A stretch of 64,000 nucleotides of DNA from assembly GCA_965202585.1 (NCBI GenBank), contig OZ241834.1, forward strand, positions 7,378,001 to 7,442,000, in the 5' to 3' direction. Both the position numbers and the translations under genes were made by a program. The first letter of the stretch is position 1, and every line of letters begins with the position of its first letter. Below are positions 1,902-30,825 of this stretch, piece by piece. The notes below the pieces were generated by a model. The model saw only the letters and a list, made by a program, of their open reading frames with translations, was not told the DNA's origin and did no database searches. This DNA is from Thalia democratica. Taxonomy: Eukaryota.

Positions 1902-4900
1902 CTATGTGTTAAAAAAATGCTTATATATATAATAAAGCTTACGAGTTCAGTTACAAAATAAACTAAGAAGTTATATGACAATGAATTTTTGTTTGTGGGT
2001 ATATTTTATACTCAAGTAGGACAATAATGTCATAAAATATTGATAAAAGAAGGAAACTTTCTACGTGCAAATTGTTTAAAAACAAAAAATTCAACTTCTA
2101 ATAAAATAAAACCAACCTCGGCGAGAACGGCTTCCGTGGTGTACACGTGATCCTCCAACTTGACTTTCTCCTCAACAACTCCCCCCATCTCCTCGATCGC
2201 CTTCAGCTTCCTCTTCGATCCGCGCCCCTCCGCGCGCCGCATGCGATCCGTCCTCCCCGGCAGCAGCCTGGCGAACAAGCAGGAGCTGCCGAGACGCCCC
2301 GCTCCCCCCGCGAGAACTCGGAGGAGGACCCGGCACGTTTCTGTTACTTTCAGCTTCTTCTCCCTCCTCACCTTTTTCTTCTTCCTCAAGCGCAGCGACA
2401 TCCTGAAGCATTCCGCCATCATCTCCGTCACCTTTCTCCTCGTCTTCCTTCTCTTCGAGCTCCAAACCACCTTCAGGACGATCTTGCCGACGAAGAAGAG
2501 CGCGGAGTAGTAGAGGAAGAGCGCGACGTTGGCTAGGAAGGAAAGTTTGGGTTTGGGGGATTTTTGTGCGCTTCTGGACAGCATTGCCGGCCAAGAGAGC
2601 GCGAATAAGTCGTTCATCGGTGAAGTGTGAAAAAGTCTGCTCATCAGGTAAGCTAACACGACTAAAATCAACATTATGAAAACTGAGCTGAAAATAACTC
2701 TTGTTTTTCTGAAGAGTTTTGTTATTTTTAAGTATTTTTCGTCAAGCGCTTGCAGGATGCACATCAAAGTTTTCAAGAGAAGCGCGCCAAACCAAGCTGC
2801 AAGGAAGCAACGTTCGACCTGATCGCTGCAAACCAAATCATCAAAAATCTCGAACACATCGTCTGATCGCAAGTTGTACGAAGTCAGTTCGAGCTTGACC
2901 GCGATTCGCTTCTTCAAGCAATTGCTCGCAACTACTGCGCACAAATGTGCCGCACCGAAAACCCACACCGACGCTTCTACGCAGCTTTCGTATTTGAAAT
3001 GTTTGCTTTTCGATTTTGCCAAACTTTCGTTTGTTTTGCTCATTAGAGCGTACAAACTGTAACAGCAGAACCAAATTACGAATACCAGCTCGGAAAGAAG
3101 GAAATCTTTTTGTGAGTGCGAAACAGATATAACTTCGCTAACTGCGCTCTTTTTCATAAGTATGTTGCTTTTGAAGTAACTTTTATGATTCGTTTTTATC
3201 AAGAACTCAGTTTTAGGATCGAAGGTGATCAAATCGCTCATTATCAAGTCCGAATTCAAATTACTTTTTATAAACTCATTGTTCATCCACGGTTTATAAG
3301 TACGTCGCTGGTCCACTTCGTAATTCACACCGTCCACGTTTTTGATGTCACCAACCGGTTTGCAGTCACTCGCCTTCTTCAGCCCGACTTGCACCAACTT
3401 TTGACAGTTGTCTCGCTGTAGCGTTTTCGAAAGCAGGTGCTGGTGAACTGGCGCCACTAGCAAACTGCTGCCAGCTTCGTTTCGATCGTTCAACACTTTG
3501 TACTCGTCAAACTTTAAAGTTGTGGTGTTGCGCAGAAACGACTCGAACTCGAGTTTGGATCTCGCCCTCGTAGTGTCGCCGCCCCCGGAGTGCTTTTCAC
3601 TCGTGAGGCAGATCAGCACAAGGAGCCACATTGACAAGATTTCTAACACTTTGTTGAACGATTTTATGGCTTTAGATCTTTTCCACTTTGAAACTTGGCA
3701 TATGCGGTTGCTGCTTCGTTTCTTTTCAAATCTTCTTTGCGGTTTGTCTTGCTGCATGAGAGTGGTGAATCTTGAGCTTTTGCTGCTCGCAAAATTTTCC
3801 ACACAGTCTTCTTTGATTCCATAATCTGCATGAATAGTACATCAAATATTTTTACTTTTAATTAGCGACCAAAAATTATTTGGAAAGTTGTTTTTCGTAT
3901 TCTTTAATGGTTGATAAAGTATTTATTAAATAAGTTAAACACTTACCAGAAGAATTGTTTTTGTAAAAGTAGTCTCCGGTGTCGACGACTTCCACACTCG
4001 GCATCAATTCTCCTAACTCTTCTGATGACGTCATAGCGCTGAACAGCGCCACCGTCACTACAACCACGACGTCGACGACCGCGAACGTCATCAGCGAGGC
4101 GACGACGAAACTCTGCCACCACGAATTCATGACGTCATCCGTGACGTAACAAGGGCGGAAGAAGCACGCATACGTCACATGCGCGTATGACGTCATAATT
4201 ATAACGATGTGGTAGGCTGTTGCGACGGGATTGAAAAAGCGCGGGAGAAACCTTCTCGGTTGGCTGTTGCTTGCATGTGGCGGCAGGTATGACGTAATAA
4301 TCGGAATGTTGTGCATTTCTCCTAAGTTGTTATGTTCAACTTGAGACAATGAGTTTAACCAAACCAGATCGCTGTTTGAATTTTTTCAATTTTTTGTTTT
4401 AATTTGGTATTATAACTATGATACTTTCCAAAGCAATCTACAATTGAAAACTTGTATATTATTTAACTTTTTATGGTTTATTAACTAAACAAACATTTTT
4501 TTTTCTATTTTTTAAGATTTAAAATTTCTATCTTATAAAATGGTGTAGGGATTTCAAAACGTTTTGTTTTATTAAAAAATAAGCAACATTATGTGAAAAT
4601 ATCTGTTTTCATAAACTCAAACTATTTATTTCAGTAAACAACTAACCTGCCAGTTTCGGAAGCAATAACGTCACTTGGAAAGTACGAGTGGTCTTTTATG
4701 CGTGACGTTTCAGATGACATCATCAGAGACGGAATTGTCACGTCACAGTCAGAAGACATGACCGAGACAGCCGTGTCACCGTTTTCTGATGAAAATTATA
4801 TATTATAAAAGAAGTGTTTAAAAATTAAGCTTGGTTATACGACAATGAAAGTACTTTTTTTTTTTAATTCAGTGACACATCTCAGTGACATGAAAGTCAT

Positions 4901-7900
4901 AAAAGTAAAATTTAAGATGTCATTATTAAGAATCCGTATTAAGATAAAATGGAAAATAGTTGTTAAATAAAAGAACTCATATATTATTACAATATATATT
5001 TATAAAGTCATTGTTTAATACGCTGTAAAACTTATTTTACTCATATCTGAAAAAATATTAAATTTACATTATAAAAACTGAACAAAATATTTAATAAATT
5101 AGAATCAATCACACCTGGGTAGCTTCTGTAGTTTTCGTCACTGTACGCGTCATAATACGACGACAAATATTTGTCGTGCTCGCTGTGATCATCTGCTGAC
5201 GAGTAGCGCATGACGTTGTCCACTTCCGCTATGACGTCATCGATGGGCGAGTTGGCGAGAAAGCCGAAACTTTTTTGCAAGTCGAAGTTGGCGAGCGTTT
5301 CCGTTTTTCTCAGTCCGCCTGTTTCGTAAAGAAAATCATTTCTAAGTAAAAAGTTAACAATCAAACAAATAATAGTGTTTTTATAAAATTATTCATAAAA
5401 TTCAATATTAGTGCATGCATTTTAATTTTTTACTCTAAAACAAAAGAAAAAATAATAGACTTGTTAGTTGTTTATTTTATAAAACAACATAATAACATAA
5501 GCTATAAATAAAATCTAAATTAAGTATACTTAGGAGCTATATCTAAAACCTGAGAAGTGTACATATTTACACGTACTTCGAGAAAAATTTTTCATTGGTA
5601 ATTCGTGCTTGAAATATTTGTCCTGATTATCAAAAAAGTACTCGCTATCATCGAAAGTCTGGGAATCAGTATTTTTTGTGCTTGTGTTGTCCTCAACTAC
5701 AACGGAAATTCGGTCGTCTAGTTTAGTTAATCTTTGAAGAAAATTATTTTTTATTTCCTAAAAGTCTTGACTTAAATTTATAATAATTATATATTATTAG
5801 AGTTTGTTAAACGGCTCAAAATATTTGGTCCTAGGACTTGGTGCACAAAGAACCTTTCGGTTATCGAGTTTCTTTTAGTCTTTATTATTTTTTTTTATTA
5901 GATCTAAATAAAAGCTTTTGTTTTTCAATTGAAATTTTAGTATGATACATTTTAATTAAGTCTTTTAGATTTACTAGTTAAACTTAGCAGTAGCATCACA
6001 AGAGATATAGTTTTCTTAATAGCTTAATAAAAGTATAAAATTTTAACAATAAAAAATTACCTATAAACAAGATTGCCTGGTTGTACAATCAACCAAGATG
6101 CAAACGATATACAAATACACCACACTAATTCCTCTATTTTTGTCAAGTAGTAACCTTTGAAATAAAATATTAGCTGTTTTAAAAAAAATTGAAATATATT
6201 GAAAAACTTTTTCAGATATATTATACTAATACTTAAACTGAAACTAATTTTGTTTAGTCGCATTACTGTTTAAGTTTCTTTAATTTTCATAAAAACTGTT
6301 TTATTAAATCTATTTTAAAACAGTAAGTTTTTTAAAACTTTAGTAAAAATATGCATCATTATCAAAAGTTTCCCAAACTTGAATTTTAAGGTTATAAGAA
6401 CTGTTCCGTCTACTCTATATTCAAATAATAAATTTACTTAAACAATTTGTTGACTAGAATTAACTATTATTCTGAAAAATTTTTGTTTAAACACGTCATA
6501 ATTTAAAACAAACCTTCAAAATGAAAGAACTGAAAGTTGAAAATTTTCTTTGAACAGCTGAGCGCAAGGAGGGATGATAAGAGCGCAATGAAGTTGATCA
6601 CTCTTTGAGATCTCTTCAAACTACCCCACTGAGGACAAGTGAATACCGACATCAAACTGTTGTTTCATTGTTATTTACATAGTTTTTGAGTGTTAGAATA
6701 ACTTAAAAACTTTAAACAACACAACAAGTTTTGAAATAAAAATTTAGCAAATCATAAAACTTTACAAATATTAGTTTATTATATAAAGTATAATTACTGT
6801 AAACCAGGAATTCCCAAACTTTTTTTCAAACGGTCTCCTATAAAATAACTAAAAAAGCTACTGCCCAAACTTAAAAGAGTTCTTAAAAAACTACTAATGA
6901 AACGGCTAAGATCTTCTTTTTCCTTTTTTTTTGCTCTTCATCATCAATTCCAGAATATCTAGTGAGAGTTTCAAATCATGGCTTTGTGGTTTCCCCTTTT
7001 ACAGCTTATTGTCTTCTAAATTTTCTAAAAGTTTTCTTTAACATCTGGTATAAATTTCAAAACTGCCATTAAAAACGCCTAAGACTTTTTTTTTTGCTAT
7101 TCATCATCAAATCCAGAAAGTTTAGTTTTAAACTATGACCTCATGGCCCCCTGAGGCCCAAGGTGCAATTTGGGTGCAAAATATAAAAAACCGTGCTGTA
7201 AACAAACATTCCTCAGAAATTTTTTAAACTTACTTTAGATTTATTATATATATTATAAAAAAAAAGTAGTATCAAACTTGTGAAATTCTACGAGGTAGTT
7301 TCTCAATCTGTAAAGAAAAGAAGTCGAGAACTTGATGTTTCCATCTAAATTTTTCAGCTTTATTTTGTCACCCGCGCGGACTGTTTTAAACGCAGGAAAA
7401 TAAAACATCTTTTGAGTATTGATGTCTCGAACTGTTACGTAATCAACAGCCCAATCTTTGACGTCATTCTTTTGATGCTTGTCACCATATTTCAATGTGA
7501 CGTGGCTGAGGTTTCCGAGGGACTGGCTGAATGTTGCTACAAACGCTTCTGAAGAACCTAAACAATGAAAGTTTAGATGTGATAAAACGAGTGAAAATAT
7601 ATACAGGAACTAAAATCATTTTCGATATTTGAAATTTATTTATTATTTTTTTTTTTTTTTTAATTATACTTTGATTACCTAAAATCATTATAAGTTGTAC
7701 ATTTTAATTATTTTTTTCTTTATAACACTAACTTATCCCTACAGTATTAGGACTTAAAAAAAAATGTTTTTGAAAACTTGTTAATGATCAAAATAAAATA
7801 ACTTACTAACCTGTTGTGAAGTTTGTAGAACGAGGTTTAACATCCGAGTTAGAAGATGAAGTCAATTTTCGCTTCTTGTAAGAACCCTGTGATTCAGTGT

Positions 7901-10900
7901 GCATCTTCAGGTAGACATTTGTATCAGCATCACAGTTGCTTCCCGGCCAACAACTAGTTTGAATCACTATCTCATAAGTCTGAACAATTTTATTAAAAAG
8001 TCAAACAAGCAAATAATTTTGTTGTGTAATATTCAAAACTAGCTGTTTAAAACGTATTACTCGAACGAGTTTTACCACTTGTAAAACTTATGTACAAACA
8101 ATCAATTTTGCTACAAATCTTATTATAAACTAACAAAATATTTGTAACTGAATACACTTTTCGTACTAAAGTTTTAGCTGTAATTTTGTACTAGAGAAAA
8201 GAGTTTTAACAACTTTACGTAACAAAAAAAAATTTTACGTTTGAATCAAGTTTGCTGAAATTGTAAATCATATTTGCTCACCTGTGTGTGGTAAAACTTG
8301 TTGTCGGGTAAAATTGCAGGCACGACTGCTTCCAGCACCTTGCTCGAACCGAGCCAATCAGAAAAGAAGTTGCCGTTTTTACTCGAAGCCGATTGGTTGA
8401 TGTTTTTCGAGAGATGCTGAGACATCATTAGCAGTGAAACGTTGATAAAAGTGATTAAGGCAACAATCTGTTAAATTTTTTATGTAAATTCTTAAACTCT
8501 TTGGTCTAGCAGTTAAAAATTTCAATGTTGTTGTTGTGACAAACCATAATAAATTAATTGTTTATTAAACAACAAAAAAACGCTCAAAACGTTTGGTTAT
8601 CTAGTCATACACCACAATTACAGTTTAATGTCTTGTCCAAGACGAGACTTAGATTTAAAAAGTTTTTTTCTGTTTTATGTAAAAAAAGAACTGTTATTGT
8701 TCATATACAAACCACAAAAAAGTCGTAACAATATTTGAAGCTTTCGAACTATTGTGACCACAAAACTTACAGTTAAAAACTTGTAGTTTGTTTCATAGTA
8801 GTAGAGTTTTTGTCTTGAAGTTGAAAAGGACAGCTTCTTGAAGGAACTCGTAAAAGTAGACAGATGATTGGTCAAACAAACTGTCTGCTCTACTGTTGAA
8901 TCAACTGACACCTGAAAAATAATAGACAACAATTGATACAATATAGATTTCTGAAACAAAAGTTTTACTTTATATCAACTTTATTCAAAACGGCCATTTT
9001 ATTTCTATTAAATTATTCTATTTGTATTTACTTTAACAGTTTATTACTAACAAAACAATGTTTCACTCATATGTATGTATGAGATATAGATAAAAATCTC
9101 CTTAAAAACATTTAAGTCGAGAACTTTAAATTGTTTGATATAAAACAAGTTACAACATTAAATTATTCCATCTTAACTAAACTATAAAAGCATAGAAATT
9201 AACATTTATGCATTCACATACTTTTACTCCGTTCGTGCTCCATATTCTACTATCTTCAACCCAATAGTAGCAATCCGACACCCAAACATTCACCATAAGT
9301 TCAATCTTCTTGGTTGACACAACACCACCTTCGCCTTCTTTGTGCATCTTCCACACAACGACATAGTACTCCGAACTCGGTTGAAAAGAACGCGATTGAA
9401 GCAAAAGCTTGACCACACGGTTCGAATCTGATGCATGTTAGGTTTAAGTTGTGCTAGCTCAAAAAACTTTGTTATAAACAAAAATTAATGAACTGATAAC
9501 TTGATAATTAAGAAGGGTTATACACTATTAATTTTCTAAATGATGTCCATCTTTTAAGACTATGGTTGTAGCTCTTTCTCTGAAGTTATCGACTGAAGCA
9601 GGCAGCATTTTCAGAGGCTTTTAGCCAATCTTCTCACAGGAGATGTTTGACAAGCATCAAGACTCGGATAAATTACAGAAGAGACCTCCTCTTTTAGCAT
9701 AGATCACAAAATTATTTAGATTCGAAACTGGCAAAACAAGAGGCTACATCTTCTTAGTCATAATCTACAAATATGACATTTTAACCAGTCCTGAGCTCTT
9801 GTTGAGGTTTTGGTTAGTGCTTCATCTTGTTTTTTTTTTTTTCATTCCTTTAAAAACTCTAATCAAAATAATATTAACCTAGAGATCTGTGTTGGTTTTA
9901 ATCACATGCTGAACAACAACAAAAAGTGACTTAAAAGACTAAAATGCTAAAACGCCATAAGTGAAAATTGCATCTGTAAGAGGTGGACTCTTCTCGGAGC
10001 ACATCAGAGAGACGGTTTGTTCATTTCTATTGATAACAGAAGCATTTAAGAATAACAAATTTAAGAATTTTTTGTGGGAAAAATACGATATATCGCTTTG
10101 CTGTGCTAGTATTTAAACTGGTAAGGAAACTCTTTACTCTGTGACTGTCCTTATTTGTTGCTTTTGGACTAAATCTGTAGGTATCATTTTATTTATATTT
10201 TGTAGTAGGAAAAGTTAGAAAAAATTATTGCCTCTATGTTACTCTTTTGAAAAAGTGTAAACAAAGCTATTATAATTAAATATAAAATCACTAATACAAA
10301 TAAAAAAAAATAAATGCTACTTTAATTTGAAGAAAAAGATAAAAAAGGAATCTAAGTTATCTTTAATTTGTTATCTTTTTATCTTAAATTAAATGATATT
10401 TATCATAAATAAACAAAAAACTCCGAGATCCTTTGATTCACCGAAATTATTTTTCAAATATTAATTCACACTAATAATTTAAAAACGATATTTTATAAAT
10501 TACTAATTAATTTACTTTTAACTTTGTATAAGACCGAAATCCTTTAAATAATTTATTACTTAATCTAAACTTTCTTTTAATTTTACAGTAGCAACTAAAA
10601 CTCGAACACCGATTTTCAGATTTAAAATATATTCAAAGTAACTGAACTTATTGAAATTATTGTTCAAAAATAGTATATATTTTAAGCTTCGAAATTGAAA
10701 TATTTTGGACTTCTTATGTTTGTTATTAGTGATAAACAACAAAATTACTAATTTAACAACTTAAATATAATTCAAAAACTATTAATGAGAATTTTAACTC
10801 AAAAAAATATATGTCAGCAAAAAAAATAAAATAACCTAAATTTTGTTCCAATTATTAATTGTGATTTAGAAGATAAAAACTATATATTAGTATAGTAATT

Positions 10901-19900: not shown

Positions 19901-22900
19901 ATCGCGTAACATTCCCATAAAAACCTTCAAAAATAAACTATAACTATAGATAAATTCATGTGAATTAAATTTTCTAAACCACACTATAAAGTGATTATTT
20001 TCATTTTAACAGAAAGTTTTACAAATATAATTTTTATGAGATGCTCAAAACCAAAAGTCTGTACTCTTTTTTTTATACATAAAGTTCTAAAACAAACAAA
20101 AAAATCCAGTTTGTAAAGATAAAAGGAATTAATTATAAACAAGAAACTAAAGTGCTTAAAAAAATGTTAAACCTAGGTTTTACTAAGCCATCCGGGTCGT
20201 AGCTGCTCGAAGCGTCTATTATGACGTCATCAAAGCGAGAAACGACTGAAGTAGACCGAGGAGCGAATTGAGGGAAGAAAAGTGACTTGAGTACTTTCAG
20301 TTCTCGCTTGTGACGCAGAGAAGTTGCTATTGGAGAATTTTCCAACTTCACCTGAATGGGGTAACTTAACATTAAGAAAATTATAAGGTTAAATAAAAAC
20401 TGACCAGTTTGGTTAAACTTAGACGAGGAGCAAAAAACTTTAAGCATTGAAATTGTTGAAAAATAGAAGCAAACTTATTTAACACCAACCAATAACTACT
20501 ATTTTACAGCATATATATGCAACAACTCAAAAATTATAAAGTTGACTGGTAGTAACTTATATTAAATTCTGAACACGAAAGTTATCTTAGTATTCTTATT
20601 CAAAAAACTGACAGACATTAGCTTTTGAGAAATTTTCTAATATAACTGTTTTCATTTTTTTATTAATACCCGTTATATAAAACACACCTCGACGTCGAGA
20701 CAGTAGTTTCCTGGTGTGAGGAACAGGGGAGGTATGACGACCACTCTGCCGTCCTGGTAAACACCCACATCGTCGTTGATCACAGCAGAGGGGTGGCTGA
20801 AATCAGCGTTGAGGCACGGGAACTTTTCTTTGTACGCTAAGTGGGGCATTCTGACGATCTTCCAGGAGTAACGGACGTCTGCGGCTTCGTTGCATTCGTA
20901 GTTCTTCAGCTTGGCCTCGATTCGAGTCTCTTGCGCTCTCAGGACCTTTTTTTAAATTTTTTATGATTTTTTTTATAATTTTAATAGTTAATCCCATTTA
21001 TTTAAATGCAGTTTTCAACATTTTTTCAAGTTTATGTCTCTTTTAATATTCTACCTCTAGTTTTTTTTTGTTCTTCTTCTTCTTCTTCTTTAGTTCTTAG
21101 TAATTTAAAAAGAATATAAATGAATCTGAATAAACTTTAACGTATTCTATGAAACTTGATTCCAATCTAGCGGAATTAAAACTTTGGAGTTATTACAACA
21201 GACAAAAAACTTACGAACATTTAAAATTTATAAACAAACAACCATGAAAAGTGTGCTAAAACAAATATTCTAACAGTCAGATGTGAGTCAAACGACACTT
21301 CAACGTTTGGTATCTTGCAAATTTCGTCAACTACATATACATCTAACACGGCAGTTCCTTTGCTCACGGGGTTTGAAACTTCAACTTTGATTTCATAAAG
21401 TCTCAACCTTCGCATTTTGTACAACAATGTTTATCTTGTCAGTTTTTAAGACAAAAAAGTAAGTAACTTTAATCAAGTGTTTGAAACTTACAAAATTAAC
21501 TTAAACTATTTATTGCCTCAGTTTTGTGACGAATAAGCTCTCTTTTTTTTAATTAAAACATTTTTAGATGCAAATAACCAAAGCATTTCTAATTTTTTTA
21601 AGTATTTGCAATCGGTTCAAATATAACTTACTCTTTGAAAACATGTGTGACTTTTGTTTTGTTCAAGTAAGTGACTCCGTCGTTAAATTTCCAGTTTTGA
21701 ACGCTCAGTTCATTTCCAGTGACCAATTCAAGTTCAAACCTGTATTAAACATGCTTACAAAATATTATTGTTAAGCTTATAAATGTAAAATACTTATATC
21801 TTCTAATAAAACATAATATCAATATTAAAAGTAAAACTAGATGTAAACATATTTCGAAAAAAAAAACATCACAACCAAAAAGTTTTAAAAATCGTTTGTT
21901 TTAAAAATAAAAGAAACAAATTAAATTACCATAAGTTATTTTATTCAGTTACAAAAATATCTTACTCGACGGGCTGGTTTATTTTGACCACTTTGGGTCC
22001 GTTTATGTTTACTGAAGTAATTTTTTCGTAAACATCGACTTCTACATACTGAGAGGTGACTTTGCTAACTTCATTAACAACTACCACACTTAGCTTGTAC
22101 CTTAAAAATAATATAAGATTGTCAAAATATATTAGATACTTTAAAAAGTTTTATTCAGTTTATACACATTTACAAAGTTAAATATACTGATTTAGTGTTT
22201 AGTTAAAAAAGAAAAGAAACATATTTGTCAGTAATAACAGTTATTTACAGTTCAGTTTTTTTTTGAATATAAACTATGTTTGAAGATATTTTTTTCAATA
22301 ACACCATTTCCATTATTTTAAAGCGTTAAAAACATTTTGATTTCATTCCATCTGTTATACCTATATTAAAAGTATTCTGCTTATTTTAGAAACTAACTTT
22401 CCGGGAATGAAGAACATGTGATTGTAGGTCGGTCTGTAAGTATTCACATTTGTACTGGTGTTAGACATTTGCCAGGAAAAATGTTTTCCCAGTCCCTTCG
22501 GCTCAGTTTCAGCAACAAACTTGTATTTTTCAAATGTTTTTAAAGGTTGAACTGCCGCTATAAGTTTGACCTCTACAATATAAAAAAGTTTTTTAAATGT
22601 TGTATTGGAAATCAAGATTGAAAATCAAAAGTTTTTTTTGTTTTTCTCAATGTTTTCTATGATAACTCTTTTTCTTACTTTTAATTTCTTCTCGTACATT
22701 TATAATCAAAGTTATGTTCCTCTGGCCCACTGAGTTGTTTAAACTTGCTATGATGCGAACTTTTCCAGTTTCATTGAAAGTTTTAGTGATACTCAAAGCT
22801 GTTATTAATTATTAATTGTTTTTTTTTTTATATTAGTTTGATTATCAGTAAAATATTTAATAACTTTAAAGTTTTTTACAAAATTCTAAAGTATACTTAT

Positions 22901-25900
22901 AAACGTTCTTTTAGTTCTAACTAACGTTATGCTTCCCAAATAAAGAAAAAAAAATTAAAACTAAATAAACAATACTTCAAACTTGTTTAAACTTTTAAAT
23001 TAATCAAAACAGTTTTTTTTTAAATCTTATCTTTAAAAATAGTCTACAATAAGTTAGTAACCGTCAGTCTGAAGAACTTGGTTTCTCAGTATCCACCTGA
23101 TGCCGACCTCCTGATTCGGGTTGTGGTTGGTCAGGTTGAAGGTGACCGGTTTACCTACTATGACGTAATAGTTGAGCCTTGCAGCAGTGACCTGCGGGAG
23201 CGTCTGCGCGATCATGTTCACTTGAGATGAGGAGCGAACTGAAGAGATCAGGTCTTCGTCGAGCTTGTTGAACGCGCTCACTGATACACTGTACCCTCCC
23301 TCGTCTAATTTTTTTGTGTTTTTAAAAAGCTGCGAAAGAGTTAAATTACCAAAAAAATAACAATGTTTAGTGCTTTATAAGTCTACATCAAATTGTAATA
23401 TAAAACTTACTAATAAAACATACACTATGCTCAAAAAAAAATTCTAGAAAAACAATTAAACAAATATCAGCCAATCACAAACGTCGAAATATGTAATGGT
23501 CCAGCAAGCACTGTTGCGTCCACTCTCCAACCTCCTCGTTTGCCACCGGTATGGCCCGCACCCTGGCAACGTCCTCGTGGCCGGTCGGAAGGTGGGTCAC
23601 GGTGAACTGGCACGTCACAAAATCCCCGTTTGTGAGAGCGGAGAGGCGGAGGGGAGCGCACTCGTAGGAGGAGGAGTTGGTGAAGAATGAGAATGAAGTT
23701 TGGAGGAGCTGGCAAGTTGAAACGACCCTGTTAAATTATTTTCATTTAACAGATGATTGAAATAATTTTGTTACAGACGAGCTGATTGTAACGGAATGTG
23801 TTTTTTCAGCTTTCGTCATAATTCTAGCTGATAACTTTTATAAATAAAAAACGAAAACTTTTTATAATAATTTAAAAGTTGTGATACTTGGATAATGAGA
23901 ATGAACTATACAATAGATAAACCTATTTTAAAAGTATGACAGAGTTTAAGACTATTTTTAATAAATTAAATGTTAGCTAGGAAATAACTCAAATTTAATA
24001 TTTGCTAGTTAAATACTTATTTATTAATTTATAAAAAAAGTTATACGTACTTAAAAAATTCTTTTAAATTAGTAGAAAAATTGTAAACGTCTTTTTTTTC
24101 CACACTACTCAAAATAACTTCAAACTTATGTAATTGGCTCACATTCAAACATAGTTTTACGATCATCATTATAACTAATAAACCAAAGTTAAAACTATTT
24201 ACAAAAAAAACTTAGTTATCAAATATTTTTAATTTTTTATGCTCATATTTTACACATGCTTAAATTAAATTGTTTAATTCGAAAAAACCTGGCTTACTTT
24301 TGTTTTTCATGACTGTATAGTTGTTTTAGTTGGATATCTGTGACATTGTTTATAACAAAAATATTGGCGCGATTTACTTCGCCCGATACTTCACTTTCCG
24401 CTGATATTGAATACTGACCTGTTAGTTAATACAATAGTTAAAATTTGTTTTAAAACATAGTTATGTATAATAAAACTGGTGAGTGTTAAAAAATTTTATT
24501 GTAAGTAACAAATTAATTAGCACATAAATATATATAGACTTAGAAAAGAAACTTTTTTTTAATATGTTTCTGTTAGAAACTCTATTAATAAAATAAAAAC
24601 ATTACTATAAAAAATGTTAACCTGGTAGAGTTATTTGTATATTTGCCTCTTGGTTTAAAACACCACCGAGATTTAGTTTTTGTTCATAAAACTGGTTTTC
24701 GTTCGTTATTAGTATTTTGAATGACTCCATAAAATTTTCCAGCCTGATTTTCAGTACATCGTACATTGCAACGTAGTCTAGATTTCACATGTTAGTTTTA
24801 TCAAAATAAACTTGTTAAACAACTATAATGTGTAAAACTATGTGTTTATACTGATAGTTTTTAGCTAGTAATCAATATAACAAAATTGACTGTGTTTAAA
24901 TTTTCTAGCTACCTATTTTTAGTTTTTTTTTTTTAATTAAGTTAGATTTGTATCAAAGCATATTAAAAAGTAATATAATTTAATTTTAAAAATAAATAAG
25001 TTTATTACTTTTTATTTCCTTAGAGCAATTTTTTTATAAAGCTGTTTAAAACATACCAACAAAGTAACTAATAAACTAAATATAGTCTTAAAGAAAACGT
25101 TATTAATTTTGGTTAACATTTTTAAGTTTTTAGTTAAATTTTCTTATAATGATTGATTTTAATGATATATAGTCTGTTGAAGTGTAAGTAGTTTATTATT
25201 TTAAAATATTATTGTTTATACAACTATCGAAGATAAAATACTTCAGCTTCTTGAAAAGTACTTAACTCACAAAACACATTTGTTAAAACAAACTAACATG
25301 GTTTTGACATTGCAATAGAATTATTATTTCGATAAAGAGTCAAATCGTCGTAACTATTTATCCAACTGTCAGTTTTATTTTCAGTTGTTGCGTCATACTC
25401 GTCTCCCTCGTTCCAATTCTCTTCAACAAAACCGTAGTCCAGTGTACTGATAATTATTTTTACGTAAAGTATAAGGGAACTGTTCATAGTTTCTATAAAA
25501 AAACATTTTTGAGTATTTTACGGAAATCTTAAAGATAAAAATATTGTTTAGAATAAAACTAGTTACTGTACTTTTTAATACTTAACTTATGAAAACGTTT
25601 AAATTTGTTTGCTTAAGTTTTAAAATTTACCACTCTAGTGTTATTAAATTCAAGCAAACCTGTTATTTTCTGGCATATACCTTAAAATAGACTCCTGTAA
25701 AAATAAAGATTATGTTTTTTTTTACTGTAATTAAAACTAACTGGTTATATAATATTTTAACCGCAATAAAAAGTAACAAAAAGTAAATTCTTCAGTACTG
25801 ATTTTTACATCTTTAATATAGAAAATAAAATCTTTATTATTTATTTAAGCAGCTTTGAAAATACAAGTGAATAAATACGTACAAGGTGTTTAGTCTAAAA

Positions 25901-28900
25901 CGTTTGTTTACAAAAGTAAAATAAATTTGAACTAACTTAAATTATTTTTACTTAACACTTTTGTTCATTTACAATAAGTTTATAAAAATTTTATTCATCA
26001 ATTTATACTTTAGCTGACACTTTTTAACATAAAATGTTACTTAAAAACCTCTGAAGACCTTTTTAGGAGAAACAGTGTCGGCTAAAATAACAATCGTTGA
26101 ATAATTATTTCATAGTTAAGCTCTTTAGTATTGAGCACTGTAATTCATACAGTTTTCTAACTTATATACAATAAGTTTATAACAAACAAGATATTATGAG
26201 ACATAGAACTTTTTTTTCATAATAAGTTTTCAACGTTTGCTTTACAAAGTAAAAACTAACAACATTTTAGTAGACGTTTGAATGTTAATCATAAGATAAA
26301 ACGCTCTAACATTAAGATTTAAATTAACAATTTGTTTACAAAAACTATTCAAAACACTCACTGTGACGACAACTTGGAGTTCTGTCTGTAGCTGACTGAC
26401 GTCATTTTTAACATTTACCACAATGGTGTAGTTCCCAGGTGTAGAAAATGCGTGTAGAAACTAAAACAAGTTACGAACTGTTATCTATGTATAGAAAAAA
26501 TCTAAACTTTTAAATTATGTAACATTTCTAACTCATATACATATAATGAATAATGAATACCATGTATTTTATTTAAAAAGGTGTTTAAAAGTTGTGGTTT
26601 ATAAAATACTTTTTATAGCTTAGAAAAACTTTCAATTTATTAAACTTTTAATGTTTCTAAAACTTAATGTTATGCCTGTATCTAAAAGTTCATAGAAAAT
26701 ACTTACATAAAATGTCAATTTGAACAGTTTTATATCACAACAAACTATAAATAAATACAATTAATGACAAAAAAATAGTTCAGTAAAACATTATAAATAA
26801 AATACAACAAAACTCTTAATTCGTCTTAAAAACGTAACGAGCTCTAAGGCTTCAAAATTTGACAGCTGAAAACAAAAATAAAAGTCTCACCAACCATCAT
26901 GTCTTCTTTAGTAACTTTTTTAATAATTTTGTCTTCCTTTTTGACGATCCACTCATAAATGACGTATTCAACTGCCCCCTCTTGCATCACGTGATAATAA
27001 TTACTCGTGTTGTCCGCTTTCGCTTGTGTTATGCCCTAAAAATTAACACATATATATGTTTAACAACATAAACAACAATTAATTGAAGAATACTTTTTTA
27101 TTTTAATAATTTAATAATTCTATGTTCTCTAAAACAACTATCTAAATAGTGAAGTTATTTTTCCATGTTAAAAGTTATTAATTTATCTTTAAATGTGTCA
27201 TACCTAAGTACTAACTAATAGATTTAACATCAGTTTTGCTAAATCTTAAACCAAAACTCAAAAGTTTGAAAACCAAAACTTAAATTATATAGTGTTATAA
27301 AAATCTCATAGGAGTCACGACTTACGTCAAGCCACACACTAGTTAATATATTCTGAACACAAATGTATGAAGTAATTTTTTCATTTATCTTTAACTTGTG
27401 AATTCCACGTTGGAAATATTCAGTAATAGTTTTTTGACCATAAAACTCAATGGGACTTTTGTCATCAATTTGTGCTGTAGAAAATACGTAATGTATAATA
27501 CAACTATATACAAAACTTCTTAAAAAACTATATGCAGACGCAAATAAAATATTAAGCCAAACTTCGTTAGGTCTTTGTACAACATTAAATTAGAGTATTT
27601 TGTTTTAGTATACAAATTAAATCTGACTAAAGCAAGCGAGAATATATGAAAACTTATTAATTTTACAGATTTTTTTTGAAAATTTGCACCTTACTTAAAT
27701 AAACAAACTTAAAAATGATTTAATCAGACAACACCTTAAAGTCAGACAGTTTTCAAGGTATCAAAAAAGCAACTGAGCTACGATTAACTTTGTATTTATT
27801 TATAATTTTTAGCAAGTTTTAGTTAATTATTAAATCTCAATACTTACAGAACAAAATTAAAGTTTTTATACTAAAAGCTTTTTAAAATACTGTAAAAAAC
27901 AAAAAACTTTAAATACTTCTCTCTTTGACGAAAAAGATATGAGATAAAAGACTTAAACCAAATCTAAATTAAAAAAGACTAAATATCATTATTACCTTAA
28001 ACTTATCACAAAACTATACATATAAATAAACACTTTTGAAAATTTAAACTGATAAATAGTAGTTAACATTACAGTATGAAACTCTTAATTACTACGTTAT
28101 TTGTTTTACAAAGCAAAGCAAAAAGTTTATAACATCATCAAATAGAAACATTAAAGTTACAAACGTTTTGATTTTAAATAAAATAAAGACAAGTTATACT
28201 TTACTAACTAATAGCATTAAAAAACAATTGATACTTTAATCAAACCACATAATAAAAATGTCTTAAACTAAAAGTCATATGAAACAAATTCATACCTGTG
28301 CACGCTTCTTCAGCGTCGCAGTTGAAATTAATTTCCATTTCTTCACCTTCAACACCGAACGTCGCATGGGAGAAGTGAGAAACCTCACCCGTCGCGTTGA
28401 CAACGGGAATTTCCCAGCTGACGTCACTCTCCGTGCCGAAAATGGCGTAAAACCGGACCACGCAGGGACCCATCCCCCATGTGCACTTTGGCGTGACTTC
28501 GAAGACGGGAGAAGCTGTGTATGACGTCACAATTGAATCGTAGTTGGGGATTTCCAGTTTGTACACAATGCCTCCATATGGAGGACCACCTGTAATATAA
28601 ACATACTAGTAAAGTAAAAAGTTTTTCTTACTTAATGTAAGTTGAAAAATTATAATAAACTTTGGTATTTTTAAAACTACTATGAAATCTATCAACTAAC
28701 TAATATCTATTAAAAACCTAAAATTGTGCAAACTTTTGTAAACTAATTTTACTTTTACAGTTTTCAGCAAACTTTCATAACATAAAATTTCAAAACACAA
28801 ACTCTTGTATAAAACCAGTTTAAACTAATTTTCTAATTAAATATTCTCTAGTACTAATGCACGCTTTAACTCCCACTCAAAAAACTACGCTACTTCATCT

Positions 28901-30825
28901 TTGAAACTCTCAAGTTCGACGTAACAACAAACATTTCACGAAAAGTCGGTTGGCTTTCTCGTTCTCGCACGTCACGTCATCACCGCTGACGTCATCGTCC
29001 GACGGCAGCTTGGCGACCTGAACGTTGTACGGGTCGAACTCGCACTCCTCCTCCCCACTCGTCTCCTCCTTCGCCTTCTCCTCGTCTATTTTGATCTTCT
29101 CCGATCTCTTCTCCAGCAGCAGCTCGAAGTTGAGGTTTTCCGCCGCCCCGGCCTCAAAGGGCACGCTCTCAGAAGCCCCGTCGAACTCCAACGTGTCTGC
29201 AACATAATTTAAGCAGTTTTTGTACAACATGTTAAATACCATATATCTGAGCCCGCTAAAAAACTAAAACAACTTTTTTTGTGCAAATGCTATTTACTCT
29301 ATTTGGTTTCGCTGCTCATGAGATACAGCTCTGCAGAGTGTGTAAATGATTGACGTTCAATAAAAAAGTATACAACATTATGTGTTTACTGTTGGATAAC
29401 CATTGTCAAATACTTGTGAGTAAAAAAAGTGCAGTATTTTTCTGATAGTAAAAATACACGCTTAAGCATGTTTAAATATATTTATATGTTTAAATATATT
29501 TATATGTTTATATTATTTTTAAATTCCAGAGACTCGATAAAGCTGTACTTTATGAGCAGTGAAACGTAGTAAGTAAATAAAGCGTACATAAACAGTTGTT
29601 TTCACTCAAACCTTATAATTTTTTATTTAAACTATTAATTACATATTATTTTTTTAATGCATGGATAAACTGTGAGATCTCGTAGTATCTATCAATGAAC
29701 AAAACTTTACTTATTTCAATCATGAGCTAGAATAAACTTGTATTTGTAAATGTAATAAGTATTCGATATATCTTTGTTTAATTAATAAAAAGATTACTAT
29801 TTTTTTCAGCTTTGTCGTAAGATTTAGTTATCGATCTATTAACTTCAGTAAACAAGCTTATACTTAACTTGGATTGAAGAACTTTAATAAACTAAAACAA
29901 TTGATTAACATTTGCTAAAAACCAAAACATTCAAAACTATTTTTTTTTGAAACAACGATTGATAATGGGTTAAACCATTTTATATAAATTTTATTTATAA
30001 AAAAAAACTACTTAAATGTGATAGTTTGAACAAAAACTTAATTTAATTTTAGTAAAACTGTTGGCAAGTATACATTTTTTACTATCTAAACTTTGTAGGT
30101 AGCGTTATAAGATTTTTTTTAATTATAACAGAAACTTAGTAAAACTACTTTTGCTTTTTGAATACTTTTTAGGTTTGTTTGACAACTTTTTACTTCCGAA
30201 CAAGACTTAGGTAAGGTATGTATTTTTTTAGTTACAAAGTTTTATACTTTACTATGCGACATTAAAATAGTGCTTTTTTTAATACGGCATGCTTGATGTA
30301 CATTTTATAACAGTAAAATTTCAAGATAGTTTAAGTGAAAATCAATAATTACTCGTTAGATTTAGTCTACTTAGCAAGAACTATTTTCTCACAAACTAAC
30401 TCCAAAATTTAAATTTTGTTATATGGGTTATTATATAAGCTGTACAGTGTACACAAAACAAACTTTGATTATAAATTCATTACTAAATACTTAAACTTTA
30501 AATATCAAAGTCTGAAAATGTAATTCTTGCTTTCAAAAAATTAAAGATAAGAATGTTTAGTGATTTTTGAAAGTTAATTTGAACAATGAAACTTTTTAAA
30601 TTAATCGTCTAAAAGAATTAGATTTTTTAAACTGACATTGATTAAAACTTTTTAGTCTTATACGTGAACATAAAATTCTTATATTTATAACATACTGATA
30701 AATAGTAACTTTTAAAGTCTTATTTCAATAAAAAATCAAACTTGTAATATACCTGCATTGAATTCATCGAAACCCGAAATAAAACAACAAAAACTAAATA
30801 AAAACAACGCTTTTATCAGCATCAT
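1357..30825 (-). CDS. PKD1: Polycystin-1 family (PKD1-like) 11-TM receptor, 53-exon model, ~3258 aa
   Basis: Hand-spliced GT-AG model, phase-consistent, CDS 9777 nt. Exons 5'->3': 30753-30825, 28933-29196, 28296-28589, 27326-27474, 26895-27035, 26362-26460, 25660-25694(uncertain), 25298-25446(5' end uncertain), 24622-24777, 24298-24418, 23483-23727, 23062-23304, 22679-22798, 22398-22572, 21966-22100, 21632-21739, 21275-21407, 20688-20945, 20173-20351, 19720-19924, 18941-19029, 18607-18773, 18458-18520, 17873-17971, 17560-17697, 16966-17052, 16572-16666, 16294-16420, 15695-15840, 15400-15520, 14754-14868, 14426-14534, 14092-14359, 13762-13911, 13316-13438, 12572-12690, 12335-12439, 11708-11835, 11032-11177, 9222-9427, 8771-8911, 8282-8467, 7811-7979, 7278-7557, 6514-6656, 6061-6154, 5577-5731, 5115-5318, 4647-4785, 3947-4371, 2117-3825, 1798-1901, 1357-1501. 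Domain order PKD repeats-REJ-GPS-TM1-PLAT-TM2-5-TOP/6TM-coiled coil is diagnostic of the family. Orthology to PKD1 rather than PKD1L1 etc. is inferred from the many PKD repeats and the PKD1-like GPS. Confidence 0.92.
2117..3825 (-). CDS. PKD1-like exon 51 (1709 nt): TOP domain, six TRP-like TM helices and basic C-tail
   Basis: Covers ORF 2030-3802. Six hydrophobic segments: VLEILSMWLLVLICL, FLLSELVFVIWFCCYSLYAL, ASVWVFGAAHLCAVVA, FLAAWFGALLLKTLM, IFSSVFIMLILVVLAYLM, FLANVALFLYYSALFF. Phase-1 acceptor at 3826; GTTGGT donor at 2116 where GC content drops abruptly. Confidence 0.85.
3947..6656 (-). CDS. PKD1-like exons 45-50: TM2-TM5 and the cytoplasmic loop
   Basis: HNLMSVFTCPQWGSLKRSQRV resembles the family HxWxSIFxRPxxSxFTRVQR motif. 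It is followed by hydrophobic segments ELVWCICISFASWLIV, FLPRFFNPVATAYHIVII and WWQSFVVASLMTFAVV. Confidence 0.82.
5808..5870 (-). repeat. SINE-like interspersed repeat, partial copy
   Basis: gctcaaaatatttggtcctaggacttggtgcacaaagaacctttcggttatcgag is shared with the other copies. Confidence 0.75.
6805..7180. mobile_element. Degenerate hAT-like MITE remnant with an internal ~163-bp direct repeat (PKD1-like intron 44)
   Basis: Left end caggaattcccaaacttttt resembles a hAT TIR. tttttgctcttcatcatcaattccagaa (6924-6955) recurs at 7086-7118. No right TIR found. Confidence 0.4.
7278..8467 (-). CDS. PKD1-like exons 42-44: TM1 and PLAT/LH2 domain
   Basis: IVALITFINVSLLMMS (TM1), LPDN, TYEIVIQTS...NVYLKM, FVATFSQSLGNLSHVTL and WAVDYVTVRDINTQKMFYFP. 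Confidence 0.88.
8559..8643 (-). repeat. SINE-like repeat, internally deleted copy
   Basis: tttattaaac...cgctcaaaac...ggttatctagtcatacaccac...tacagtttaatgtcttgtcca. Confidence 0.7.
8771..14534 (-). CDS. PKD1-like exons 32-41: GAIN domain ending in the GPS motif
   Basis: SDCYYWVEDSRIWSTNGVK|VSVDSTVEQTVCLTNHLSTF matches the GPS pattern C-x-x-W...W...C-x-x-x-H-L-[TS]-x-F. Confidence 0.88.
11166..11350. repeat. Tandem duplication (93-bp period) spanning the acceptor of PKD1-like exon 39
   Basis: tgtcataaagtctgtaacaaaacagtttta and gcaaacaaaaaacgtg each occur twice. Confidence 0.85.
13545..13650 (-). repeat. SINE-like repeat copy
   Basis: gagcgctcaaaatatttggtcctaggacctggtg...ggttatctagtc...tttaacgtctagcccaggac. 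Confidence 0.75.
14754..21407 (-). CDS. PKD1-like exons 17-31: REJ domain
   Basis: VDEICKIPNV, YSWKIV, VIPPLFLTPGNYCLDVE, VIIDASSSYDPD, RFLWEC, VHIECPLC, FEEGRSYSI and GPVDGRCAV...FCRDW are co-linear with the PKD1 REJ motifs. Confidence 0.88.
21275..29196 (-). CDS. PKD1-like exons 2-17: acidic N-terminal segment and tandem PKD/Ig-like repeats
   Basis: Repeated PKD signatures: FLHAFSTPGNYTIVVNVKNDVS, DHYIFRHEGGYSVSVSAFNKL, NHMFFIPGKYKLSVVVVNEVS, WKFNDG...VTHVFKELRLYEIKVEVSNPVS. Confidence 0.85.
30753..30825 (-). CDS. PKD1-like exon 1: signal peptide MMLIKALFLFSFCCFISGFDEFNA
   Basis: Met, Lys, then a hydrophobic core. Its phase-1 GT donor matches the phase-1 acceptor of exon 28933-29196. Confidence 0.85.

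What the first reader, a model, noticed from the sequence alone, without database searches (positions are those of the whole stretch)
4026..28994. CRE palindrome TGACGTCA occurs 10 times, always inside coding exons and in two reading frames
Seen: exact TGACGTCA at 4026, 4130, 4188, 5232, 7459, 20222, 26397, 28419, 28522 and 28987. All fall in PKD1-like coding exons, and I saw none in about 50 kb of intron and intergenic DNA. Near-matches TGACGTAA/TTACGTCA at 4142, 4290, 11122 and 23161 are also exonic. The motif is read as (M/V/I)TS in some exons and xDV in others. Independent bases at ~40% GC predict only ~0.1-0.2 hits in 9.8 kb of CDS. Established: TGACGTCA is the CREB/ATF site. Inference: selection acts on the nucleic acid, giving a second code in the exons (exonic TF sites, a splicing or exon-definition signal, or methylation-protected CpG) that may offset the weak splice sites.
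Basis: partly seen in the sequence, partly recalled or inferred. Interest (0 to 1): 0.8.

Follow-up and report, generated by a model that had tools for sequence, protein, structure and literature searches.

The report
Exon-embedded TGACGTCA palindrome in a salp
In this salp gene, and across its genome, the eight-letter palindrome TGACGTCA sits in protein-coding exons far more often than chance or codon usage allows and is unchanged in related salps, which points to an unexplained second signal layered on the protein code.

Summary
All ten TGACGTCA copies are at the stated coordinates, where 0.3-0.4 are expected from composition. All ten lie in minus-strand exons of a PKD1/REJ-like gene: RNA contigs prove five, conservation and splice sites support three, a PKD-domain match one, and ORF/GC alone one.

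Synonymous-codon shuffles give 0.93 copies (maximum 6 in 3000). Ten of 18 amino-acid contexts that could carry the word do carry it. Those contexts are about five times more frequent here than in dynein exons, so the protein sequence is shaped too.

Six of six sites checked are unchanged in diverged ocean-metagenome relatives (joint P about 0.004).

Genome-wide there are 56,755 copies, against 9,487 for the reversed word and 3,680 for TCACGTGA. One-mismatch neighbours are not enriched. Spacings between paired copies are multiples of 3 (P=2e-6).

"Exon-only" is not absolute: a high-copy interspersed repeat, a local repeat family and a tandem array also carry the word. Introns of the sampled genes have none.

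Methylation-protected CpG is disfavoured. The consensus is the dyad-symmetric RTGACGTCAY, which implies a duplex reader. My leading reading is exon DNA bound by an ATF/CREB-type bZIP dimer (0.4); an RNA-level exonic signal is nearly as likely (0.35).

First readers flagged the same pattern in more than 20 other windows of this genome. I found no paper describing it.

The parts
4026..4033 (.). TGACGTCA site; sense (minus) reading AMTSSE, xTS frame
   Evidence: in RNA-proved exon; unchanged in L048 and L049
4130..4137 (.). TGACGTCA site; TDDVMN, xDVx frame
4188..4195 (.). TGACGTCA site inside a 12-bp palindrome; IMTSYA, xTS frame
5232..5239 (.). TGACGTCA site; IDDVIA
   Evidence: exon 5115-5316 proved by RNA
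7459..7466 (.). TGACGTCA site; KNDVKD, in the PLAT-domain exon
20222..20229 (.). TGACGTCA site; FDDVII
   Evidence: exon status rests only on an open 339-nt GC-rich frame
26397..26404 (.). TGACGTCA site; KNDVSQ, in a PKD-repeat exon
   Evidence: Pfam PKD E=1.1e-4
28419..28426 (.). TGACGTCA site; ESDVSW
   Evidence: unchanged in L050 and L051
28522..28529 (.). TGACGTCA site; IVTSYT
28987..28994 (.). TGACGTCA site; DDDVSG. It is an unchanged island between substituted and indel-bearing flanks in the relatives
3947..4371 (-). Internal coding exon (425 nt) with 3 full sites and 4 TGACGT half-sites; its acceptor is A-rich with no pyrimidine tract
   Evidence: spliced contigs of X4, X9 and X10
5115..5316 (-). 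Internal coding exon with one site
7278..7554 (-). Internal coding exon (second part of the PLAT domain) with one site
28296..28589 (-). Internal coding exon with two sites; boundaries inferred
   Evidence: ag|GTG acceptor, CAG|gtatga donor and exon/intron divergence contrast in L050 and L051
28925..29230 (-). Coding exon with one site; boundaries approximate
2115..3825 (-). 1.7-kb exon of the same transcript with no full site, no TGACGT/ACGTCA half-site and only 2 amino-acid opportunities
4142..4149 (.). Near-match TGACGTAA in exon 3947-4371. The other listed near-matches (4290, 11122, 23161) lie in open GC-rich frames; 27322 and 38100 lie in AT-rich DNA

Best explanation
TGACGTCA (wider consensus RTGACGTCAY) is a discrete nucleic-acid element that is kept in the coding exons of this pelagic tunicate by codon choice and, where the protein tolerates it, by amino-acid choice.

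Shown:
- the excess over codon-preserving nulls;
- use in both stop-free frames;
- conservation in relatives;
- specificity for the exact word;
- absence from the introns of the same genes.

Inferred: My leading reading is that a bZIP (ATF/CREB-class) dimer binds the exon DNA.

Since intronic copies are not favoured, the benefit must be tied to exon DNA. Examples would be slowing or marking RNA polymerase II over exons whose splice signals are weak, or gene-body regulatory input that works only in the GC-richer exon chromatin. That last step is speculation. The element is not a classical promoter-proximal cAMP-response element.
For: Excess in the gene:
- 10 copies observed against 0.93 in synonymous shuffles and 0.20 in codon permutation.
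- It is the commonest 8-mer in the gene's CDS; 10 of the 13 GACGTC hexamers are the full word.
- 10 of 18 amino-acid opportunities are used, against about 5% expected from codon usage.
- It is the only outlier among the 256 palindromic 8-mers in 27 kb of exons: 14 observed, 1.12 expected.

Genome-wide specificity:
- 56,755 copies against 9,487 (reversed word) and 3,680 (TCACGTGA).
- One-mismatch neighbours are not enriched: 174,827 against 214,176 for the control word's neighbours.

Symmetry:
- A purine lies at -1 on both half-sites in 45 of 58 cases, P=3e-5.
- In 39 C1 pairs counted by eye, 37/39 have a pyrimidine at +1 and 32/39 a purine at -1. The mirror arrangement (Y at -1, R at +1), which would serve RNA pairing equally well, is rare.

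Conservation: 6/6 sites conserved, joint P=0.004.

Known reader: ATGACGT(CAT) is bound at about 1 nM by the Atf1-Pcr1 bZIP dimer, including when it lies inside an ORF (PMC2396409).

Repeats: interspersed and tandem repeats carry the same word, as mobile-element promoters often carry transcription-factor sites.
Against: - Ordinary transcription-factor sites have no reason to avoid introns. Yet the introns of the sampled genes hold 0 exact copies among 10 one-off words, against 14 exact and 16 one-off in their exons.
- I found no clear promoter-type cluster. The one candidate (L016) turned out to be coding.
- Bending protein sequence to host a transcription-factor site is costly and has no precedent at this scale.
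- Binding, occupancy and any effect on transcription or splicing are untested.
- Genome-wide, the outer A..T flank is at composition level: 7,495 of 56,755, i.e. 13%.
Confidence: 0.4

Rival explanations
1. RNA-level exonic signal. UGACGUCA acts in the pre-mRNA or the mRNA in one of two ways. It could be an exon-definition/splicing enhancer that compensates for A-rich acceptors lacking a pyrimidine tract. Or it could be a self-complementary element that pairs with another copy (within or between molecules) to shape mRNA folding, packaging or fate.
For: - Exon restriction with empty introns is what an RNA signal predicts without extra assumptions.
- The sites are retained unchanged in spliced RNA contigs.
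- Strict dependence on the exact word fits base pairing.
- Copies cluster: 1,769 and 1,678 close pairs against 8 and 22 for the control. Both dynein occurrences are same-exon pairs.
- In the minimum-free-energy fold, the copies at 4188 and 4130 form an 11-bp stem.
Against: - A single-stranded RNA-binding protein has no reason to prefer a perfect palindrome, let alone the CRE.
- The flank preference is R..Y, not merely complementary.
- Only 7 of about 28-35 exons carry a site, the 1.7-kb exon has none, and there is no bias toward exon edges.
- The inner stem of the hairpin is broken without compensation in L049.
- There is no excess of G-U-compatible variants: 4 against 3.
- The two copies in exon 28296-28589 do not pair in the fold.
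Confidence: 0.35
2. Non-adaptive origin. A sequence-specific mutation, repair or gene-conversion bias, possibly coupled to spliced mRNA or to recombination at ATF-type hotspots, creates and maintains the word without any function.
For: - Density tracks how much freedom the protein has: 11.9 opportunities per 1000 codons in the fast-evolving PKD1-like part against 2.4 in dynein.
- Dynein-2 residues at the two sites look derived: ADII became ADVI by a single A>G change.
- Exons carrying sites are among the GC-richer ones.
Against: - No known process writes one exact 8-mer.
- One-off neighbours are not enriched, in the genome or in exons.
- Unconstrained introns of the same genes have none despite 10 one-off precursors.
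- Sites are conserved islands within variable flanks.
- Hotspot motifs are expected to erode rather than accumulate (established population-genetic argument).
Confidence: 0.1
3. Methylation-protected CpG. The central CpG survives because it is shielded from methylation-driven decay.
For: C5 DNA methyltransferase domains exist in the genome, and the word has a central CpG.
Against: - CpG observed/expected is 0.9-1.2 in exons and about 0.8 in non-coding DNA, so there is little decay to be protected from.
- TCACGTGA, with the same composition and ACGT core, is at baseline: 3,680 against 4,813 for its control.
- ACGT itself is barely enriched in the CDS: 35 observed, 28.6 expected.
Confidence: 0.03
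4. Artefact of composition, codon or dipeptide usage, or of duplicated protein repeats.
For: Exons are GC-richer than introns, D-V and T-S are common dipeptides, and the gene contains repeated PKD domains.
Against: - Local-composition, dinucleotide, synonymous and codon-permutation nulls all fail by 10- to 130-fold.
- Two different frames yield the same DNA word.
- The 300-bp contexts of the ten sites share no similarity with one another.
Confidence: 0.02

Closest known systems
cAMP-response element / ATF-CREB bZIP site (TGACGTCA; ATGACGTCAT)
   Same: The 8-bp palindrome is identical, and the dyad-symmetric purine/pyrimidine flanks match.
   Different: The sites lie in internal coding exons spread over 25 kb, not near a transcription start. 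They number about 57,000 per genome and constrain codons and residues. Binding is untested.
ade6-M26 / CRE recombination hotspot of fission yeast (Atf1-Pcr1 on ATGACGT, hotter as ATGACGTCAT; PMC2396409)
   Same: The same word acts on DNA while sitting inside an open reading frame, and the palindromic form is the stronger one.
   Different: M26 arose from a chance mutation and is not a genome-wide exon feature. Hotspot motifs should erode, whereas these are conserved. Recombination here is untested.
Exonic splicing enhancers and their imprint on codon and amino-acid usage
   Same: Both are exon-restricted nucleic-acid signals that bias synonymous and even amino-acid choice and are absent from introns.
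   Different: Known enhancers (from my own knowledge) are short, degenerate, strand-specific, concentrated near exon edges and enriched about 1.2- to 2-fold. This is one exact palindromic 8-mer, 10- to 100-fold enriched, not edge-biased, and missing from most exons.
'Duons' (transcription-factor footprints inside coding sequence, Stergachis et al. 2013; disputed; cited from memory)
   Same: A transcription-factor consensus lies inside CDS, with codon bias that preserves it.
   Different: The duon effect is weak, spread over many motifs and contested. Here a single motif dominates the exon 8-mer spectrum and reshapes proteins.
DNA-bound roadblocks that promote exon inclusion (CTCF at CD45 exon 5, Shukla et al. 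2011; cited from memory)
   Same: It would explain why a double-stranded-DNA site has to lie in or next to an exon.
   Different: That case is a single locus, a different protein and methylation-dependent. No genome-wide code of this kind is known.

Membership tests
CRE / ATF-CREB bZIP binding site | Palindromic core TGACGTCA | tested here: met
   10 exact copies in the window; 56,755 in the genome
CRE / ATF-CREB bZIP binding site | Dyad-symmetric flank preference of the ATGACGTCAT type | tested here: met
   Purine at -1 in 45/58 half-sites. In C1 pairs, 37/39 have Y at +1 and 32/39 have R at -1 (counted by eye). The outer A..T itself is at composition level genome-wide.
CRE / ATF-CREB bZIP binding site | Promoter-proximal, non-coding position | tested here: not met
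   Sites lie in internal spliced coding exons. The promoter-like triple in L016 is coding.
CRE / ATF-CREB bZIP binding site | Occupancy by a bZIP dimer; response to cAMP or stress | not testable with these tools
   Needs ChIP, DAP-seq or EMSA
Exonic splicing enhancer / exon-definition signal | Enriched in exons and depleted in flanking introns | tested here: met
   14 exact / 16 one-off in exons against 0 / 10 in introns of the window and dynein loci
Exonic splicing enhancer / exon-definition signal | Concentrated near exon edges and present in most internal exons | tested here: not met
   Sites lie 35-240 nt from exon ends. Only 7 of about 28-35 exons carry one, and the 1.7-kb exon has none.
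Exonic splicing enhancer / exon-definition signal | Association with weak splice sites | tested here: inconclusive
   Only 7 exons have proved boundaries. The 3-site exon has an A-rich acceptor, but the others are mixed.
Exonic splicing enhancer / exon-definition signal | Mutation changes splicing | not testable with these tools
   Needs a minigene assay
Duon (TF site constraining codons) | Codon choice preserves the motif beyond codon usage | tested here: met
   10 against 0.93 in synonymous shuffles; 10/18 opportunities used
M26-type recombination hotspot | Hotspot activity, and erosion by biased conversion | tested here: inconclusive
   Activity is not testable. The observed conservation (6/6) runs against erosion.
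Methylation-protected CpG | Background CpG depletion with selective survival of the protected CpGs | tested here: not met
   CpG observed/expected 0.8-1.2; TCACGTGA at baseline
Repeat- or domain-borne motif | Sites share homologous flanking sequence | tested here: not met
   No similarity among the ten window contexts. The feature is met for some non-coding copies elsewhere.

The most novel reading that the evidence does not exclude
This salp lineage has evolved a genome-wide exon-marking code. One exact 8-10-bp palindrome, written into tens of thousands of coding exons at the expense of codon and even amino-acid choice, is read as a duplex. The code may substitute for splice signals that have degenerated in an extremely AT-rich, repeat-filled genome.
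Probability: 0.3. Interest if true: 0.9.

Novelty: new variant of a known kind. Interest (0 to 1): 0.78.

Why it matters
Overlapping codes in exons are known, but they are weak, degenerate and disputed. Here a single exact word is the commonest 8-mer of a gene's coding sequence, uses more than half of all places where the protein could host it, alters protein sequence and stays fixed in relatives. That effect size makes the question experimentally tractable.

If a DNA-binding factor marks exons, or self-complementary RNA words organise transcripts, it would be a new way of telling exons from introns in a genome with poor splice signals.

It also matters in practice:
- Gene finders for thaliacean genomes could use the word as an exon feature.
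- Codon-usage and dN/dS analyses in these species would need to mask it.

Tried and rejected
Blocked or empty searches:
Gene-class comparisons therefore rest on dynein alone.
- A JGI metagenome scan for more relatives of exon 3947-4371 found none.
- Dynein-2 exon relatives were only 70% identical or less, or had no DNA. They were used only for residue comparison.
- A PDB sequence search with the 603-aa exon product found nothing.
- Seven full-text searches and three papers checked (two salp genome papers and a tunicate splicing paper) gave no report of this word in thaliacean or tunicate exons.

Ideas tested and dropped:
- The promoter reading of the site cluster at 3962-4345 and of the L016 triple: both are coding.
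- Mutational supply as the cause of exon bias: introns hold as many one-off words but no exact ones.
- In-frame insertion or a mobile mini-palindrome: the dynein sites arose by substitution.
- General enrichment of ACGT or of palindromes: not seen.
- A G-U wobble signature for RNA pairing: 4 against 3, no signal.
- Conservation of the nested hairpin: broken in L049.
- Sense/antisense asymmetry of near-matches: confounded by stop codons (TGACGTAA contains TAA in one frame), so not used.

Full report
**1. The observation**

TGACGTCA occurs exactly ten times in the window, at the coordinates given. Dinucleotide-preserving shuffles give 0.40 (largest 3). The window is very AT-rich (21-36% GC in 2-kb bins, apart from one of 44%), with short GC-richer patches. 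Those patches total 10.3 kb and contain all ten sites. Expectation from local base composition is 0.33 for the whole window and 0.075 for the strata with at least 40% GC, which hold all ten.

**2. The sites are in real exons**

Contigs of one RNA-like run of the source organism and of two ocean metatranscriptomes are spliced on the minus strand with GT..AG introns. They define these exons:
- ..2115-3825
- 3947-4371 (three sites)
- 4647-4785
- 5115-5316 (one site)
- 5575-5729
- 7278-7554 (one site)

Sites 28419, 28522 and 28987 lie in exons defined in two ways: by splice consensus, and by a sharp contrast between conserved exon and diverged intron in metagenomic relatives. Site 26397 lies in an ORF matching the C-terminal half of a PKD domain (E=1.1e-4). 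The exon holding 7459 matches PLAT (E=2e-4). A weak REJ match lies between them. This is the polycystin-1/PKDREJ domain order, so "PKD1-like" is reasonable. Site 20222 rests only on an open GC-rich frame.

In the sense frame, seven sites read xDVx and three read xTS. Two more of the same type (27322, 38100) lie in AT-rich DNA.

**3.

I assembled 6.26 kb of in-frame coding pieces, using RNA-proved boundaries where available.
- Shuffling synonymous codons within the gene gives 0.93 sites (sd 0.93, maximum 6 in 3000).
- Permuting whole codons gives 0.20.

So codon choice contributes about tenfold, and the amino-acid sequence itself about fivefold.

The word can be encoded only at x-D-V-[IMTNKSR] or [MLV]-T-S. 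The internal exons hold 18 such places and 10 carry the word. Several of the rest are one base away. Outside the word, GAC is 0.60, GTC 0.32, ACG 0.24 and TCA 0.21 of their synonymous sets, which predicts about 5% usage.

TGACGTCA is the most frequent 8-mer of the internal CDS. Ten of the 13 GACGTC hexamers are the full word, while ACGT itself is barely enriched (35 observed, 28.6 expected). The contexts of the ten sites share no similarity, so duplicated protein repeats do not explain them.

**4. Beyond this gene**

The genome (802 Mb; earlier follow-up notes call it a pelagic tunicate, a salp) holds the following counts:

| Word | Copies | Reversed-word control |
|---|---|---|
| TGACGTCA | 56,755 | 9,487 |
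| TCACGTGA (same composition, same ACGT core) | 3,680 | 4,813 |
| ATGACGTCAT | 7,495 | 857 |
| TGACGTCA, up to one mismatch | 231,582 | 223,663 |

Subtracting the exact copies from the last row, the one-off neighbours (174,827) are not enriched relative to the control's (214,176). Only the exact word is. These mismatch counts may be lower bounds.

In about 21 kb of approximately delimited dynein exons there are 4 sites. All are in allowed frames, using 4 of 17 opportunities. Opportunities run at 2.4 per 1000 codons there, against 11.9 in the PKD1-like internal exons. At both sites in a dynein-2 exon the salp residues look derived: ADII in other animals is ADVI here, a single A>G change. This fits a pervasive pressure that is limited by protein constraint.

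Across 27 kb of exons the word is the only clear outlier among all 256 palindromic 8-mers: 14 observed, 1.12 expected under synonymous shuffling.

Close pairs are frequent: 1,769 at gaps of 5-30 and 1,678 at gaps of 31-56, against 8 and 22 for the control. Among 75 non-redundant pairs on contig 1, 45 have a start-to-start distance divisible by 3 (P=2e-6). That is an annotation-free sign that paired sites are mostly coding.

**5. "Only in exons" needs qualifying**

A motif-blind 160-kb random sample has 15 sites against 0.69 expected, and eight lie in DNA below 30% GC. Looking closer:
- Three form a cluster that turned out to be coding. It follows the signal peptide of a small Cys-rich membrane protein.
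- One lies in a long open frame.
- Two belong to a roughly 265-bp interspersed repeat with at least 1,185 candidate copies.
- Two belong to a local repeat family.
- A separate locus is an 1,187-bp tandem array with one site per unit.

That leaves about four unique non-coding sites in roughly 290 kb.

In the introns of the window gene and the dynein genes there are 0 exact words among 10 one-off words. In their GC-rich exon patches there are 14 exact and 16 one-off. A higher mutational supply in exons therefore does not explain the bias.

Density is uneven even within this transcript. The 1.7-kb exon 2115-3825 has no site, no TGACGT half-site and only two opportunities. The intronless galactosyltransferase gene at 39680-40681 has none.

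**6. Conservation**

Ocean-metagenome contigs give diverged relatives: L048 and L049 for exon 3947-4371, and L050 and L051 for the two exons at 28.3-29.2 kb. They differ at 8-24% of third codon positions and 4.5-13% of first and second positions.

All six sites covered are unchanged in every relative. At 28987 the word is an intact island between substituted flanks and a 3-nt deletion. Only 32-42% of other 8-nt exon windows are fully conserved, which gives a joint probability of 0.004. Using third positions alone it is about 0.016. The relatives are not independent lineages, so this is supportive rather than overwhelming.

**7. What reads it**

Flanks are dyad-symmetric. A purine lies at -1 on both half-sites in 45 of 58 cases (P=3e-5). 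In 39 contig-1 pairs, 37 have a pyrimidine at +1 and 32 a purine at -1 (counted by eye). The consensus is therefore RTGACGTCAY.

Symmetry of this kind has meaning only for a duplex. The word is the optimal ATF/CREB bZIP site. Atf1-Pcr1 binds ATGACGT at about 1 nM, and the palindromic ATGACGTCAT is the more active form, even inside the ade6 ORF (PMC2396409). That favours a bZIP dimer on double-stranded DNA.

Against this, ordinary transcription-factor sites need not avoid introns, and I found no promoter-type cluster.

An RNA-level signal explains the exon restriction without extra assumptions. The self-complementary copies can pair: 4188 with 4130 forms an 11-bp stem in the minimum-free-energy fold, z=-2.0. 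But several observations count against it:
- A single-stranded RNA-binding protein would not favour a perfect palindrome.
- Y..R flanks, which would pair equally well, are rare.
- The inner stem is broken in L049.
- The two copies in exon 28296-28589 do not pair.
- Wobble-compatible variants are not favoured.
- The sites are neither edge-biased nor present in most exons.

My odds:

| Reading | Probability |
|---|---|
| Exon DNA read by a bZIP, with an exon-linked benefit | 0.40 |
| RNA-level signal | 0.35 |
| Non-adaptive bias | 0.10 |
| Methylation-protected CpG | 0.03 |
| Compositional or repeat artefact | 0.02 |

Methylation protection is disfavoured because CpG observed/expected is 0.8-1.2 and TCACGTGA is at baseline. 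DNA methyltransferase domains do exist in the genome.

**8. Novelty**

Seven full-text searches and three papers checked (two salp genome papers and a 2026 tunicate splicing paper) found no description of this word in thaliacean or tunicate exons. First-stage readers of this scan flagged the same pattern in more than 20 other windows of the same genome. Those are unchecked notes, not independent evidence. No follow-up of them was visible.

I file this as a new variant of a known kind (overlapping nucleic-acid signals in exons). The mechanism is open, and the effect size is unusually large.

**Limits**

- Exon models outside 2-8 kb are approximate.
- The dynein exon set was delimited by open frame and GC content.
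- Samples are small (29 non-tandem sites).
- Gene-class and UTR comparisons could not be made, because no more genome sequence could be fetched.

Noticed in passing
L005:7650-7915 (G000:C2:9007650-9007915); second copy L017:5167-5401: A roughly 265-bp interspersed repeat with at least 1,185 first-look candidates at 86-91% identity. Both sampled copies carry an intact TGACGTCA.
   Followed up: partly
L007:1-10000 (G000:C4:3000001-3010000): Tandem array with an 1,187-bp period. Each unit has TGACGTCA directly after a ...ttcctag acceptor-like sequence.
   Followed up: no
G000:C1:49968705-49997951 and C467:13962-15317: Three tandem, apparently intronless ORFs of 873-878 aa, plus one on an unplaced contig. 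Each has a complete C5 cytosine DNA-methyltransferase domain (up to 180 bits), which is unlike the split matches typical of animal DNMT genes. The DNA could not be fetched.
   Followed up: no
L016:6919-7437 (minus strand): A small predicted type-I membrane protein (signal peptide, Cys-rich PSI-like segment, TM helix). Three TGACGTCA copies within 58 nt lie right after the signal peptide, read as DVI, MTS and MTS.
   Followed up: partly
window 5800-5870 and 6830-7130: Intronic stretches with very high summed contig depth (up to 3e5) and many rearranged joints in run X2: very high-copy repeats inside the PKD1-like gene's introns.
   Followed up: no
window 4120-4200 (minus strand): A nested hairpin is possible in the mRNA. 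The two full sites form an 11-bp outer stem, and the near-sites GTGACGTA and TACGTCAC form an 8-bp inner stem. The inner stem is broken in relative L049.
   Followed up: partly
window 39680-40681 (minus strand): An intronless beta-1,3-galactosyltransferase gene (Pfam Galactosyl_T, E=1.9e-35) at 58% GC with no TGACGTCA. It is GC-rich enough to leave a 295-aa antisense open frame.
   Followed up: no
G000:C8:12.3-17.8 Mb and 53.5-53.8 Mb; C6:13.4-13.7 Mb: Large tandem arrays of single-ORF (apparently intronless) protein-kinase genes.
   Followed up: no
G000:C2:77.54-78.00 Mb: A cadherin-repeat gene cluster with a roughly 38-40-kb repeating unit, resembling a clustered protocadherin-type array.
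   Followed up: no
G000:C1:4714546-4723780 and 14423469-14423526: A repeated unit with three TGACGTCA copies in 58 bp. One frame stays open through all three (DVT...VTS...MTS), so it is probably a tandem gene family rather than a promoter.
   Followed up: no
exon set (window CDS plus dynein exons): TCACGTGA occurs 4 times against 0.39 expected under synonymous shuffling, but it is not enriched genome-wide (3,680 against 4,813 for its control). This is probably chance.
   Followed up: yes
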